Both the position numbers and the translations under genes were made by a program. A stretch of DNA of 48,145 nucleotides, the filler included, from Leucoraja erinacea (taxonomy: Eukaryota): assembly GCF_028641065.1 (NCBI RefSeq). It is 2 parts of 2 records of this genome, joined end to end, with 100 filler letters (N's around TTAATTAATTAA, not from the genome) between each part and the next. Parts side by side here need not be neighbours in the genome. Positions count along the whole stretch, not along the records: positions 1 to 22,986 come from NW_026575948.1; 1 more part is not named here. One strand, written 5' to 3'. Every line of letters starts with the position of its first letter. The first letter of the stretch is position 1. Shown in pieces: positions 14,930 through 20,403 of the stretch. The notes beneath the pieces are model-generated. The model worked only from the letters and a program-made list of their open reading frames with translations, ran no database searches and had not been told where the DNA came from.

Positions 14930-15111
14930 CAAGAATGCAATGTGGAGTTTTAATGAGTGTAAGATTTCACAAATTACATTATCCCAAATGGCCCACAACA
15001 GTATCAGCACAGCTGACTGAGCTAATGTTGATTCAGTAATGAGTTTGCTTTTCATGGTTTGATCTGTTGGATGAGTTGATTCAAATATGTAGGGAGTTCA
15101 ACACTTATGGT
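14930..15111 (-). other. Putative untranslated 3' terminal exon of the receptor gene
   Basis: Acceptor tattttattttcacAG (15112-15114), non-repetitive AT-rich sequence, ATTAAA at 14949-14954 (minus), then a U/GU-rich downstream element. The cleavage position is approximate. Confidence 0.55.
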
Positions 15112-15859
15112 CTGTGAAAATAAAATAGATATATTATTATACCACATGTACAGGCACAAAAACATTAATAGCATTGAACACAATTGACTACATTATTGTT
15201 ATTAAAGTTCTTGTCAAGTATGTGTCCACATAGCTCCTAGTCATAGAGTCATAGAGTGATACAGCGTGGAAACAGGATCTTATGGCCCACACTCCCCACA
15301 CCGGCCAACATGTCTCAGCTACACTAAACCCACCTATCCATGTACCATCCAAGTCCTGGATGAGCTCCTTACTTCTGGCCAGGTTCGGTCTAGTTTTCCC
15401 TGCCAGGTCGCCTTTGTTATGTTGCAGTAAGTCTACGTTGCAAGATTCAAGAGGGTTTGCACTAGTTACAAATTTGTTGTTGGTTTTGTTGATTATATTT
15501 TATCTAAGTTTGTTGTACCGACAAACCGTACAATGGAATTCTTACTGGCAGCAGCGTAACAGGGCTGTACATACAACACACTTAGATAAAATATAATAAA
15601 CAAAACCAACAATAAATGTGTATCTGGTGCAAACACGAAAATACAAGATCCTTGGTGCAACACAAGGAAGTCCATTCATGTTCATAGTTGAGCCTAGTCT
15701 TCTGTGGGGTTCAAGAGCCTGATAGTTGCAGGGAAGAAGCTGTTCTTGAACCTTGTGGTCACGGTTTTCAGACTCAGATATCTTCTACTTGATGGTAGGA
15801 GTGTAATGAGAGCGTGGCCAAGGGAGTGCGGGATTTCAATGGAACTGAATGTATTGAAG

Positions 15860-16180
15860 ATTAGTTTAGTTGTCAATTTAAGTTTAGTTTAGATTAGTTT
15901 AATTTTCTTTGGTTTGGTTTGGTTAAGTTTAGTTAAGTTTGTTTATGTTTAGTTAAGTTAAGTTAAGCTTAGTTTAGTTAAGTTTCGTTTCGTTTAGAGT
16001 ATTTCTGTATAGTTTAGTTTATTTTAGTTTCGTTTCTTTGTTTAGTTTAGGTTAATTTAGTTTAGTATAGTTTTGTTTGCTATGCTTTGGATTCGTTTAT
16101 TTAAATGTAGATAAGTTTGTTTTAGTTTAGTTTAGTTTAGTTTAGTTTAGTTTAGTTTAGTTTAGTTTAGTTTAGTTTGT
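15860..16180. repeat. (TTTAG)n degenerate microsatellite
   Basis: Direct reading; perfect at ~16120-16178. Confidence 0.95.
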
Positions 16181-16293
16181 AAAGGACAATATTTTCACTG
16201 TGGTGGCACCTCGCAGGTGACAATAAAATGCACCATTGTCCAGTGACCTCAGCTGCTAATACAACCCACACATGGCGCTGGCAATCCTCTTAC

Positions 16294-16466
16294 CGTTTGA
16301 CCAGCCTGTTAGGCTTCTTTTGTCGGGCTGGCAAATCCACAAGACTCCCATGAGCGGATGATGAAAACTATTATAACGTTGATCACAATGAACGTTGCAA
16401 GTTTCACTCCCATTACCACCAGCTGCCAACGTAATCCCCATGCAGGGCTTTCTACAGGGATCCGAC
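16294..16466 (-). CDS. Stalk/transmembrane/cytoplasmic exon of the V-domain receptor (coding 16309-16466)
   Basis: Acceptor ttttattccttcAG (16467-16469). The phase-1 frame gives xRIPVESPAWGLRWQLVVMGVKLATFIVINVIIVFIIRSWESCGFASPTKEA*, a hydrophobic stretch containing a Lys. Stop TAA at 16309-16311, donor G|GTAAGA just after 16294; the phase matches the V-exon donors. Confidence 0.8.
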
Positions 16467-16635
16467 CTGAAGGAATAAAACATCAAGTTCACCAATTACT
16501 TTCCCAGGTTCTTTCTGTCTCCTTCCATTCTTATACACCGAGATGTTCCCACTGTCATTGTAAACGTAGACCAATTCGCACATTTCAGTTGCCTGAACAG
16601 TAACAACAGATGTGGGAATCTTGCATAGAATTCAA

Positions 16636-17018
16636 AGTGCTGGAGTAACTCAGCGGGTCAGGCAGCATCTGTGGAGAACATGGATAGGTGACGTTTCACA
16701 GAGTGCTGGAGTAACTCAGCGGGTCAGGCAGCATCTGTGGAGAACATGGATAGGTGACGTTTCACAGAGTGCTGGAGTAACTCAGCGGGTCAGGCAGCAT
16801 CTGTGGAGAACATGGATAGGTGACGTTTCACAGAGTGCTGGAGTAACTCAGCGGGTCAGGCAGCATCTGTGGAGAACATGGATAGGTGACGTTTCACAGA
16901 GTGCTGGAGTAACTCAGCGGGTCAGGCAGCATCTGTGGAGAACATGGATAGGTGACGTTTTCACAGAGAGCTGGAGTAACTCAGTGGGTCAGGCAGCATC
17001 TGTGGAGAACATGGATAG
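16636..17018. repeat. 66-bp tandem repeat (~5.7 copies) derived from a Penelope terminal repeat
   Basis: Unit agtgctggagtaactcagcgggtcaggcagcatctgtggagaacatggataggtgacgtttcacag. The same unit occurs at ~26185-26345 and inverted at ~26476-26620. Confidence 0.9.
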
Positions 17019-18013: not shown

Positions 18014-18119
18014 TGCCCAATTGAACTGATTGTGTTGCTAACAAATGCACAGTTTAGCGGCACAGTCCCGCCTTCAGTAACTATGATCTGATTCGGTGAT
18101 TGTATGATCGATTCATCAA
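18014..18119 (-). pseudogene. Truncated V exon V4 (A-B strands only)
   Basis: Encodes DESIIQSPNQIIVTEGGTVPLNCAFVSNTISSIG, then joins directly to a CR1 3' fragment; the flanks match those of V1. Confidence 0.85.
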
Positions 18120-18854
18120 CTTGAAAACATATTATAGTCTCGGCGCTGGCCCCGGGTGCTGTCTGTCTATGTGGAGTTTGCACGTTCTCCATTATATTGC
18201 CTGCGTTTCCCCTGGGCGTTCTTGCTTCCTCTCTCAACCCAAGGACGCGCGTCCTGACAGGCAATTAACATCCCTAAACAACTCCTAGCATCCATCCAGC
18301 CAACGGAGACAAAAGCACACTGGATAGCCACCAAGTGGTCACAGGAGTGGAAGGCAACCTGATCTCCATTACACAGCTCCATCTGTTCACCAGATAAAAC
18401 CTGTCCAGGGTCTGACCTCCCCAGAGGAGCATGGGTGAAGCTCAACAGACTTGGTACTGGAGTTGGGCGCTTCAACTTCCTCTCCGCAGACTGAGAGTCT
18501 GGGGAGAGGAAGACTAGAGATATGGAAGGGTACAAAGAGCACGCGAGGTGTGAAAAAGACAGATCAAAGCAGAAGATGCTCAAGATGATGAATGGGTCTC
18601 CACCCGAAACGTCACCCATTCCTTCTCTCCAGAGATGCTGCCTGTCCCGCTGAGTTACTCCAGCTATCTTCGGTCTAAACCAGCATCTGGAGTTCCTCAC
18701 ATTTTCCCATCTCCACCCCTTTTTGCTTCCCTCCGCAGAGACCGTTCCCTCCTCAACTAACTGGTCAACTCATCCCTTCCCACCCAGACCACCCCTTCTC
18801 CAGGTACCTTCCCCAGCAACCGCAGGAGATGCAACACCGGTCCTCACCGGAGAA

Positions 18855-19576
18855 GACCTGGGTGTCATGGTACACCAGTCATTGAAAGTAGGCATGCAGG
18901 TACAGCAGGCAGTGAAGAAAGCGAATGGTATGTTAGCTTTCATAGCAAAAGGATTTGAGTATAGCAGCAGGTAGGTTCTACTGCAGTTGTACAAGGTCTT
19001 GGTGAGACCACACCTGGAGTATTGCGTACAGTTTTGGTCTCCCAATGTGAGGAAATACATTCTTGCCATGGAGGGAGTACAGAGAAGGTTCACCAGACTG
19101 ATTCCTGGGATGTCAGGACTTTCATATGAAGAAAGACTGGATAGACTCGGCTTGCACTCGCTAGAATTTAGAAGATTGAGGGGGGATCTTATAGAAACTT
19201 ACAAAATTCTTAAGGCGTTGGACAGGCTAGATGCAAGAAGATTGTTCCCGATGTTGTGGAAGTCAGAACAAGGGGTCACAGTTTAAGGATAAGGGGGAAA
19301 TCTTTTAGGACCGAGAAGAAGAAAACATTTTTCACACAGAGAGTGGTGAATCTGTGGAATTCTCTGCCACAGAAGGTAGTTGAGGCCAGTTCGTTGGCTA
19401 TATTTAAGAGGGAGTTAGATGTGGCCTTTGTGGCTAAAGGGATCAAGGGGTATGGAGAGAAGGCAGGTACAGGATACTGAGTTGGATGATCAGCCATGAT
19501 CATATTGAATGACGGTGCAGGCTCGAAGGGCCGAATGCCCTACTCCTGCACCTATTTTCTATGTTTCTATGTTTCT
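18855..19576 (+). mobile_element. CR1/HER1-type LINE 3' fragment
   Basis: [13 protein letters not shown]...RVVNLWNSLP and tttctatg tail. Confidence 0.9.
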
Positions 19577-19577
19577 A

Positions 19578-19965
19578 ATACCTCCTCCCTCAACTCTGTC
19601 CAGGGACCCCAACAGTCCTTTTAGGTGAGGCAGATGTTCACTTGCTGCTCCTCCAACCTCATCTACTGTATCCGTTGTTCCAGATGTGAACTCTAACACA
19701 TCGGCGAGACCAAACGCAGACTGGGCGATCGTTTCGCTAAACACCTTGTCTCAGACCGCCTGCACCAACCTGATCTCCCGGTTACTAAACACTTTAATTC
19801 TCCTTCCCATTCCCACACAGACCTTTCTGTCCTCGGTCTCCTGCATTGTCAGAGTGAGGCTAAATGCAAATTGGAGGAGCAGCATCTCATATTTGGTTTG
19901 GGCAGTTTACACCCCAGTGGTATGAATATTGATTTCTCTCACTTCAAGTAATTCCGGCATCCTCT
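19578..19965 (+). mobile_element. Penelope GIY-YIG fragment
   Basis: Degenerate copy of the 41190-41635 endonuclease region. Confidence 0.8.
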
Positions 19966-20049
19966 CCGACACACAAAGGCAAGTGGAGTCGGATTAAGAA
20001 TGTTTTTTTTAAGAACAGTAAAGATAAAGTTAAGGTTCTGCAAACTTAC

Positions 20050-20403
20050 TTGTGACCGTGACATCTGTGCTGTCCGCAAACGTACGTGTGATCGTGGCAT
20101 GTATGCCGTGACCATTATATATTCCCCCTGTGGTAACACTGACTCGGCAGTAATACCTTCCTGTATCGGTCATTTTGAGGTCAGTGATTTCGATGGATTC
20201 TTTTATAATTCCCGGTGAACGATATTGCAGAACGCGGCCATAATAGTCGCCGCTCGTGTTGGAAACGGCACGAGTTTCCACGTCTTTGTACCAATTAAAG
20301 GCCCCAATTAAACTGCTTGTGTAGCCAACAAATGTACAGTTTAGCCGCACAGTCCCGCCTTCAGTAACTGTGATCTGCTTCGATTCAGCGGATCCAACAG
20401 CAC
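20050..20403 (-). CDS. Ig V-set VJ-type exon V5 (NKp30/NCR3-like), open, with a 5-aa A-strand deletion and a duplicated J-like end
   Basis: 354 nt, open, phase 1-1; acceptor at 20404-20406, donor GTAAGT at 20044-20049, alternative donor GTACGT at 20080-20085. Encodes C...WYKD...YYC...GHGIHATITRTFADSTDVTVT. Confidence 0.8.

What the first reader, a model, noticed from the sequence alone, without database searches (positions are those of the whole stretch)
14930..20403. Non-rearranging VJ-TM activating receptor gene with TCR-alpha-like transmembrane segment and gene end
Seen: V5 (phase-1 donor) can splice in frame to an exon absent from the ORF track, encoding a short Cys-free stalk, the TM QLVVMGVKLATFIVINVIIVFII and a tail RSWESCGFASPTKEA* with no ITAM/ITIM. 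The stop lies 15 nt before a further donor that leads to an untranslated exon with ATTAAA. Established: NKp30 is a single-exon VJ domain plus a basic-residue TM coupling to CD3zeta/FcRgamma, and TCR alpha/delta C genes also end in an untranslated exon. The TM aligns without gaps to recalled mouse TCRalpha ([28 protein letters not shown]), with the Lys in the position of the zeta-binding Arg and a shared R-x-W-x-S end. Inference: an NKp30-family or novel proto-antigen-receptor-like activating receptor lacking a C domain and RSS.
Basis: partly seen in the sequence, partly recalled or inferred. Interest (0 to 1): 0.9.

Follow-up and report, generated by a model that had tools for sequence, protein, structure and literature searches.

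The report
Skate NKp30-family activating receptor gene
This is a skate-type member of the already described shark/ray NKp30 (NCR3) family of innate immune receptors: one antibody-like domain joined to a membrane anchor with a buried lysine. The proposed special kinship with the T-cell receptor alpha chain does not hold up.

Summary
- a germline-joined VJ exon (20403-20050, phase-1 donor)
- a stalk/TM/tail exon open only in the matching phase (16466-16294, one Lys in the TM, no Tyr in the tail, TAA 15 nt before a GT donor)
- a further exon with ATTAAA (from 15111)

A 196-aa NCBI protein from the skate Rhinoraja longicauda joins a V of this type to the same TM exon, collinear across the junction. 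The TM motif (LRWQ...G-x-K-L-x-x-F) recurs in stingray "NCR3-like" proteins and in a published nurse-shark NCR3. ITIM-tailed relatives show a paired activating/inhibitory family. The folded V domain matches human NKp30 best in the PDB.

Stranded RNA reads cover all three exons at about 3-5x on the correct strand. No junctions were shown, and reads from paralogues cannot be excluded. The leader exon is not visible: an N run and a LINE lie upstream.

The TCR-alpha alignment beats shuffles for this copy only. A family profile ranks the TCR-alpha string 36th of 87 control TMs, and TCR-alpha's second basic residue, C domain and RSS are absent.

Verdict: a new member of a known kind.

The parts
20050..20403 (-). 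VJ exon (V5). It is phase 1 at both ends and encodes a 117-aa V-set Ig domain with a germline-joined J-like G strand. A 12-residue duplicated J end acts as extra stalk. An alternative weak donor follows 20086.
   Evidence: AlphaFold model: mean pLDDT 83, G strand at residues 100-105, residues 106-117 low confidence. The top 4 Foldseek hits are human NKp30. P0001 is 61% identical over 100% of the exon.
16294..16466 (-). Stalk / transmembrane / cytoplasmic exon. The CDS runs 16466-16312 and the TAA is at 16311-16309. There is one Lys in the outer third of the TM and an Asn deeper in. The 15-aa tail has no Tyr. The donor follows 16294.
   Evidence: The exon is 72% identical to the C-terminus of P0001, collinear with no indel at the V/TM junction. 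The same motif occurs in P0002, P0005, P0006 and P0070. X12 shows stranded depth of 3.3 against 0.
14930..15111 (-). Predicted untranslated terminal exon with ATTAAA at 14954-14949. The 3' end coordinate is approximate.
   Evidence: Acceptor and poly(A) signal are read. X12 stranded depth is 4.6 against 0 in bin 14991-15181. The unique intron bins 15373-16136 lie at 0-0.8 on both strands. P0001 does not support this exon, because its model reads through the donor.
18016..18117 (-). Truncated V fragment (psiV4) inside the V5-TM intron. Its acceptor region is deleted and its 3' part is replaced by a transposon tail.
20538..20730 (.). N run in the intron upstream of V5. The leader exon of this gene is not visible in the window; it is either hidden here or lies upstream of the LINE.
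   Evidence: The only leader-like sequence (MQWSVVAWFF) is at 7568-7539, upstream of V3.
20793..22882 (-). Non-LTR retrotransposon (RT and zf-RVT ORFs) in the same orientation, directly upstream of the N run. It probably sits in or replaces the leader intron.

Best explanation
This is an activating-type member of the elasmobranch NCR3 (NKp30) family of paired innate immune receptors.

The predicted protein is a type I membrane protein with these parts:
- a leader (not seen in the window)
- one germline-joined VJ Ig domain
- a stalk of about 25 residues, lengthened by a duplicated J end
- a transmembrane helix with a conserved Lys on a conserved helical face
- a 15-residue tail without signalling motifs

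Inferred mechanism: the V domain binds a rapidly evolving ligand. The buried Lys pairs with the acidic TM residue of an ITAM adaptor dimer (CD3zeta, FcRgamma or DAP12 type), as the TM charge of human NKp30 does with CD3zeta. ITIM-tailed relatives with similar V domains give the opposing inhibitory signal.

Shown here: the exon anatomy, family membership, conservation of the TM exon and the fold. Inferred: the adaptor pairing, the ligand, and that this particular copy is the expressed one.
For: - V-to-TM join: P0001 (XP, LOC144602683, Rhinoraja longicauda, 196 aa) consists of leader, V, the same duplicated J end, and the same TM exon. It is residue-for-residue collinear across the predicted junction.
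- TM exon conservation: the motif L-R-W-Q...G-x-K-L-x-x-F occurs in Hemitrygon akajei 'NCR3-like' XP_072920818 and XP_072892294, in Hypanus sabinus XP_059827209, and in nurse-shark NCR3 QTT61904.1. The TM core is nearly identical to P0001's while the V domain is only 61% identical.
- Helical face: conservation has a helical moment (P 0.02) on a face that holds the Lys.
- Paired family: ITIM-tailed members with uncharged TMs include LOC144602684, whose locus number directly follows P0001's LOC144602683.
- Tree: the window's V domains join P0001 (SH-aLRT 89) and lie in a batoid clade (SH-aLRT 97) that holds both receptor types.
- NKp30 kinship: phmmer hits to possum NCR3 (E 7.6e-7), a newt protein that UniRef names NCR3, and nurse-shark NCR3. 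PDB NKp30 chains score about 1e-5. Foldseek ranks 1-4 are human NKp30, with rmsd 2.4-2.7 A.
- Selection: the upstream intron is 99% identical between copies while the exons are 88-91% identical (Fisher P 0.005 and 0.0009). dN/dS for V5 against V1 is 4.2.
- RNA: run X12 covers the V5, TM and 3' exons at about 5, 3.3 and 4.6x with the first mate on the + strand only.
- Human precedent: NKp30's TM charge binds CD3zeta (PMC12272517).
Against: - No splice junction was displayed; 443 joints were hidden behind repeat joints.
- Reads were accepted at 95% likeness, so close paralogues could supply them. The 3' part of V5 (bin 19957-20147) has only 0.36x where about 1.6-2.6x would be expected.
- No indexed RNA run holds V5.
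- No leader exon was found for V5. A LINE and an N run lie upstream.
- V5 carries a 5-codon deletion and a degenerate first J copy.
- I could not tell whether P0001, an NCBI entry named only 'uncharacterized protein LOC...', rests on a transcript.
- MHC linkage, the ligand and the adaptor pairing are untested.
Confidence: 0.75

Rival explanations
1. This copy is a decaying or silent duplicate in a birth-and-death gene cluster. The exons look intact, but the leader or promoter was lost to the LINE insertion, and the RNA reads come from near-identical paralogues elsewhere in the genome.
For: - Three of the five V elements in the window are defective: V1 has lost its acceptor (AG to AT), V3 has a 4-nt frameshift, and psiV4 is truncated.
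- No leader is visible. A LINE abuts the N run upstream of V5.
- Read depth falls over the copy-specific 3' part of V5. The psiV4 bin also attracts stranded reads (2.46 against 0.6), which shows cross-laying from paralogues.
- dN/dS for V5 against V2 is 1.0.
Against: - The V5 and TM reading frames are open and all four splice sites are canonical.
- The TM exon is under strong constraint relative to P0001.
- dN/dS of 4.2 against V1, with dS about equal to intron divergence, fits selection rather than decay.
- The V5, TM and 3' exons have similar stranded depth in X12, with near-empty unique intron bins.
Confidence: 0.17
2. One reading: a relic proto-antigen receptor whose TM and gene end are homologous to TCR-alpha (Lys equivalent to the zeta-binding Arg, shared R-x-W-x-S end, untranslated last exon).
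For: - The gapless alignment to the quoted mouse TCR-alpha string scores 38, with z 5.1 against shuffles. That is above all 87 non-family real TM segments (maximum 22).
- L, M, G and the basic residue at the N-terminal end, and W-x-S at the C-terminal end, are fairly conserved in batoid members.
- The stop lies just before a donor that leads to a non-coding exon, as in the TCR-alpha constant gene (own knowledge).
Against: - The family profile ranks the TCR-alpha string 36th of 87 controls.
- The nurse-shark member scores 5 and one stingray member 15, which is within background.
- No TCR chain appears in a PDB HMMER search at E<=10, nor among the nearest clusters in the ESM Atlas.
- TCR-alpha's second basic residue and its F-N are not matched.
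- There is no C-domain exon and no RSS.
- In P0001 the same region is coding and reads through the donor.
- The match was chosen after the fact, from memory.
Confidence: 0.06
3. V5 and the TM exon belong to different transcripts. The TM exon would be used by V exons upstream of the window, with V5 skipped or spliced elsewhere.
For: No junction was seen. Family relatives with two or three tandem VJ domains exist (P0003, P0010). The locus carries tandem V exons.
Against: P0001 has exactly one V of the V5 type (it shares the J-end duplication) joined to this TM exon. V5 is the nearest intact V upstream. The phases match.
Confidence: 0.04

Closest known systems
Nurse shark NCR3 family (Kinlein et al. 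2021, Immunogenetics 73:333; GenBank QTT61898-QTT61905), in particular QTT61904.1 (P0070)
   Same: A single germline-joined VJ domain, a short stalk, and a TM with the same L-W-Q...G-x-K-L-A-x-F motif and Lys. The tail is very short or absent.
   Different: The V domains are only about 32% identical and are not sister groups in the V tree. The shark protein has a Cys in the stalk and lacks the batoid Asn in the TM and the W-x-S tail. The paper itself was not held, so what it says about TM charge could not be checked.
Rhinoraja longicauda LOC144602683 (P0001) and stingray 'NCR3-like' XP_072920818 and XP_072892294
   Same: The same architecture and TM exon. P0001 also shares the duplicated J end and uses the distal donor.
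   Different: P0001 has Glu where the window has TAA. It then reads 8 more codons, through the donor position. The stingray proteins have longer, unrelated tails.
Human NKp30 (NCR3)
   Same: A non-rearranging VJ-type Ig domain that is the best structural match. It has a basic residue in the outer part of the TM. It pairs with CD3zeta through the TM charge, and its isoforms differ in the last exon (PMC12272517).
   Different: About 26% sequence identity. Human NKp30 has Arg rather than Lys, and there is no detectable TM sequence similarity. The skate gene belongs to an expanded, paired activating/inhibitory cluster, whereas mammals have a single gene.
TCR-alpha constant-region TM
   Different: There is no second basic residue, no C domain and no RSS. 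The similarity is absent at family-profile level.
UrIg / UrIg2 (Flajnik et al. 2025, PMC12227049)
   Same: Non-rearranging elasmobranch genes with a VJ exon.
   Different: UrIg2 has nine to eleven C domains in sharks (PMC12227049). Here no C exon lies between the V and TM exons.

Membership tests
NCR3 / NKp30 family | One V-set Ig domain encoded with its J-like G strand in a single exon, with no RSS | tested here: met
   (PF07686, E 5.9e-11). The GHG...TIT motif is in the same exon. No heptamer lies next to any V exon. In the model the G strand is formed by residues 100-105.
NCR3 / NKp30 family | Sequence kinship with bona fide NCR3 | tested here: met
   The search with P0001, the window's closest relative, recovers nurse-shark NCR3 QTT61898 (E 5.8e-13) and QTT61904 (E 1.1e-7), possum NCR3 (E 7.6e-7), a newt protein that UniRef names NCR3, and many 'NCR3-like' shark and ray proteins. 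The V5 exon itself hits PDB NKp30 chains at about 1e-5. Caveat: nanobodies and pIgR score as well or better by sequence alone.
NCR3 / NKp30 family | V-domain fold closest to NKp30 | tested here: met
   Foldseek ranks 1-4 are 6yjp, 3noi (two chains) and 3pv6, with E 1.7e-8 to 8.3e-8 and rmsd 2.4-2.7 A over 104-105 columns. The other chains in the top dozen have rmsd 3.9-5.3 A.
NCR3 / NKp30 family | Type I TM with a basic residue and a short tail lacking ITAM and ITIM (activating form) | tested here: met
   The Lys is invariant in all six family TM segments. The basic residue lies in the outer part of the TM, as in the possum and newt NCR3 TM segments listed.
NCR3 / NKp30 family | Exon plan of leader / VJ / stalk-TM-tail / further 3' exon, joined in RNA | tested here: inconclusive
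   The phases and splice sites fit, and P0001 is collinear across the junction. Stranded depth covers all three exons. However, no junction was displayed and no leader was found.
NCR3 / NKp30 family | Linkage to the MHC | not testable with these tools
NCR3 / NKp30 family | Binds B7H6-type ligands; associates with CD3zeta or FcRgamma | not testable with these tools
TCR-alpha/delta constant region | Two basic TM residues (Arg and Lys four residues apart) in the conserved assembly motif | tested here: not met
   There is only one Lys. The position of TCR-alpha's Lys is Ile, Val, Leu, Ala or Ser in the family.
TCR-alpha/delta constant region | Ig C domain and connecting peptide before the TM; V exon flanked by an RSS | tested here: not met
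   Between V5 and the TM exon lie only transposon sequence and a V fragment. There is no RSS. P0001 has no C domain.
TCR-alpha/delta constant region | TM sequence similarity above background | tested here: inconclusive
The pairwise score for this copy is 38 (z about 5). The family profile ranks the string 36th of 87, and there is no PDB HMMER hit.
UrIg / UrIg2 | VJ followed by C1-type Ig domains | tested here: not met
   There is no C exon in the locus or in P0001. Description of UrIg2 in PMC12227049.

The most novel reading that the evidence does not exclude
The outer half of the Lys-bearing TM helix (L-x-x-M-G-x-K) and the W-x-S inner end of batoid K-type NCR3 receptors might share ancestry, or a conserved assembly geometry, with the zeta-binding half of the TCR-alpha TM. 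Together with the non-coding last exon, this gene type would then preserve the membrane module of a pre-RAG VJ receptor. Separately, the 99%-identical introns flanking V exons with dN/dS of about 4 may mark very recent, intense diversifying selection on a skate NK-type receptor cluster.
Probability: 0.08. Interest if true: 0.7.

Novelty: new member of a known kind. Interest (0 to 1): 0.35.

Why it matters
- It adds a skate locus to the elasmobranch NCR3 family.
- It shows that the Lys-bearing TM exon has been kept from nurse shark to skates and stingrays, while the V domains diverge quickly and under positive selection.
- It shows that activating and ITIM-bearing forms coexist. This is the hallmark of paired NK-type receptors, here in the oldest jawed vertebrates.
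- This is useful for tracing NK-receptor and VJ-domain evolution and for choosing constructs for adaptor-pairing tests.
- It does not reveal a new kind of receptor or a link to TCR-alpha.

Tried and rejected
- The Rhinoraja locus and its exon structure could therefore not be read.
- Kinlein 2021 (PMC8273117), Flajnik 2012 (PMC3709836) and Ohta & Flajnik 2015 (PMC4594805) are not held.
- The search for homologous proteins on the TM region of P0001 found only P0001 itself.
- The look-up of sequencing runs found no indexed RNA holder of V5.
- Read laying gave depth, but its joint, variant and loose-end tables were filled by transposon-derived reads. The junctions 20050/20086-to-16466 and 16294-to-15111 could be neither seen nor excluded. 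Both read tools are single-use.
- HMMER of the TM exon against PDB chains gave only chance-level hits and no TCR chain. The ESM Atlas gave only generic single-V or TM clusters.
- tblastn found no second TM exon, no ITIM-type exons and no second leader in the window.
- A strand-versus-loop count of V5/V1 differences was abandoned, because the J duplication distorts the alignment.
- Complex prediction was not used, because no ITAM-adaptor sequence of this lineage was available by reference.
- The joined V5+TM protein was deliberately not built or searched. The N runs were not filled.

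
Full report
**Observation**

The gene lies on the minus strand. The V exon runs from 20403 to 20050, preceded by the acceptor AG at 20405-20404. It starts and ends in phase 1 and encodes 117 residues.

These residues form a V-set Ig domain (Pfam PF07686, E 5.9e-11). The two Cys, the Trp, YYC and a J-like G-H-G...T-I-T motif are all in the same exon. No RSS heptamer lies next to any V exon in the window.

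A 36-nt tandem duplication of the J end, the donor and the first intron bases created two donors. The weak one is C|GTACGT after 20086 and the strong one is A|GTAAGT after 20050.

The next exon, 16466-16294, is open only in the phase that matches the V donor (the frame from the first exon base is full of stops). It encodes:
- a Cys-free stalk
- a hydrophobic helix with one Lys and one Asn
- a 15-residue tail without Tyr

The TAA at 16311-16309 lies 15 nt before ACG|GTAAGA. A further exon begins at 15111 and carries ATTAAA at 14954-14949.

**Is the V-to-TM join real?**

The V exon, searched by reference, has one close relative among 5.8 billion proteins. This is P0001, a 196-aa NCBI protein of the skate Rhinoraja longicauda (61% identity, E 9.4e-35). 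P0001 consists of:
- a leader
- one V domain
- the same duplicated J end
- a C-terminus 72% identical to the window's TM exon

The two are collinear residue for residue across the predicted junction. The acceptor at 16466 and the distal donor at 20050 are therefore the ones used in that model.

P0001 has Glu where the window has TAA. It continues for eight codons through the donor position, so it does not support the third exon.

I did not build or search the joined V5+TM protein.

**RNA evidence**

No indexed RNA run holds V5. Four raw RNA runs carrying the same species label were laid on 14800-20500.

In X12, a paired 75-nt library, depth came from reads with the first mate on the + strand only:

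| Bin | Content | Depth (+ / -) |
|---|---|---|
| 20148-20338 | V5 | 5.0 / 0 |
| 16328-16518 | TM exon | 3.3 / 0 |
| 14991-15181 | 3' exon | 4.6 / 0 |
| 15373-16136 | unique intron | 0-0.8 on both strands |

This fits a spliced minus-strand transcript that includes the third exon. X5 showed weak, unstranded cover. X3 and X9 showed none.

There are three limits:
- The joint table listed only repeat-derived joints, with 443 more hidden. No junction was seen or excluded.
- Reads were accepted at 95% likeness. The copy-specific 3' part of V5 (bin 19957-20147) had only 0.36x.
- The dead psiV4 bin also drew stranded reads, so paralogues contribute.

**Family**

A full HMMER scan with P0001 over 1.84 billion representatives found the same TM exon in five other proteins:
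- two Hemitrygon akajei proteins that NCBI names 'natural cytotoxicity triggering receptor 3-like'
- one Hypanus sabinus protein
- nurse-shark NCR3 QTT61904.1, whose accession falls in the QTT61898-QTT61905 run that I take, from memory, to be the published shark NCR3 set

L, Q, K, L and F are invariant across these TM segments (L-R-W-Q...G-x-K-L-x-x-F). Conservation has a helical periodicity (P 0.02), on a face that includes the Lys.

Many other relatives have uncharged TMs and long tails with ITIM-like motifs. One is LOC144602684 in Rhinoraja, whose locus number directly follows P0001's. This is a paired activating/inhibitory family.

In a V-domain tree, the window's V5, V1 and V2 join P0001 (SH-aLRT 89). 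They sit inside a batoid clade (SH-aLRT 97) that mixes both receptor types. That clade lies within a weakly supported group (SH-aLRT 86-87) that includes shark 'NCR3-like' proteins.

Bona fide NCR3 is also hit: possum NCR3 and a newt protein that UniRef names NCR3. PDB NKp30 chains score about 1e-5.

An AlphaFold model of the V5 exon has a mean pLDDT of 83. The first J copy forms the G strand, and the duplicated 12 residues have low confidence, consistent with a flexible stalk. Its four best PDB matches are all human NKp30, with rmsd 2.4-2.7 A.

**TCR-alpha claim**

This is z 5.1 against shuffles and above all 87 non-family real TM segments (maximum 22). The stated refutation test is therefore passed for this copy.

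The signal does not extend to the family:
- In the same register, relatives score 26, 26, 24, 15 and 5.
- A profile built from the six TM segments ranks the TCR-alpha string 36th of 87 controls.
- HMMER of the TM exon against PDB chains finds no TCR chain at E<=10. That set includes chain m of the TCR-CD3 cryo-EM entry 7fjd (246 residues), which I take from memory to be the full-length alpha chain.

TCR-alpha's second basic residue and its F-N are not matched. There is no C exon and no RSS. I rate true kinship as unlikely.

**State of this copy and of the locus**

No leader exon is visible for V5. Upstream lie 134 nt of conserved intron, an N run (20538-20730, not filled) and a LINE in the same orientation. 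The only leader-like sequence starts at 7568, upstream of V3, and runs into another N run.

The five V elements in the window:

| Element | State |
|---|---|
| V5 | intact |
| V2 | intact |
| V1 | acceptor lost (AG to AT) |
| V3 | 4-nt frameshift |
| psiV4 | truncated by a transposon |

The intron upstream of V5, V3 and V1 is 99% identical. The exons differ by 9-12% (Fisher P 0.005 and 0.0009). dN/dS for V5 against V1 is 4.2, with dS about equal to intron divergence. By eye on the three-way alignment, the changes cluster in the CDR1-, C''D- and CDR3-equivalent segments. This points to recent duplication with diversifying selection, which is typical of NK-type receptors.

**Mechanism (inferred)**

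The V domain binds a fast-evolving ligand. The buried Lys recruits an ITAM adaptor dimer, as the TM charge of human NKp30 binds CD3zeta (PMC12272517). ITIM-tailed relatives counterbalance this signal.

**Verdict**

This is a new member of a known kind, the elasmobranch NCR3 family. [quoted passage not shown]

Noticed in passing
window 2996-7568, minus strand: There is a second family unit. A leader exon (ATG at 7568) runs into the N run 7008-7537. It is followed by V3 (6840-6512, 4-nt frameshift), V2 (5957 to about 5626, intact with good splice sites) and V1 (3328-2996, open frame but acceptor AG changed to AT). No TM exon follows within the window.
   Followed up: partly
window 3460-4017 and 18167-18700, minus strand: The sequence upstream of V1 is homologous to that upstream of psiV4. 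The unit [V2...V1] therefore looks like a duplicate of [V5...psiV4]. The ancestral unit may have carried two tandem V exons, as in relatives with two or three V domains (P0010, P0003).
   Followed up: no
window 20404-20535, 6841-6972, 3329-3460 versus the adjoining V exons: The upstream intron is 130-131 of 132 bases identical between copies. The V exons are only 88-91% identical. dN/dS for V5 against V1 is 4.2, which signals diversifying selection or intron homogenisation.
   Followed up: partly
window 7008-7537 and 20538-20730: Both N runs lie in the leader-to-V intron of a V exon; the first also covers the last bases of the leader exon. They hide what would settle the 5' end of the gene.
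   Followed up: no
window 16636-17019 and 15861-16178: A 66-nt unit is repeated 5.8 times at 99% identity inside the V5-TM intron. A (TTAGT)n microsatellite of 63 copies lies in the TM-3' intron. The 66-nt unit and neighbouring transposon pieces have RNA depth in the hundreds to thousands on both strands.
   Followed up: partly
window 20793-22882 (minus); 1226-2377 and 11573-12416 (plus): Non-LTR retrotransposon reverse-transcriptase fragments (PF00078, zf-RVT). The one upstream of V5 has the same orientation as the gene.
   Followed up: partly
window 9213-11364, plus strand: Three consecutive ORFs of 184-237 aa, one with a CCHC zinc-knuckle-like motif, have no Pfam match. They are possibly the gag-like part of a retroelement. 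This was observed only.
   Followed up: no
P0018 (LOC144602684) and P0001 (LOC144602683), Rhinoraja longicauda: These genes have consecutive locus numbers. One encodes an ITIM-tailed form and the other a Lys-TM form, and both share the same duplicated J end. They may be an adjacent inhibitory/activating pair.
   Followed up: partly
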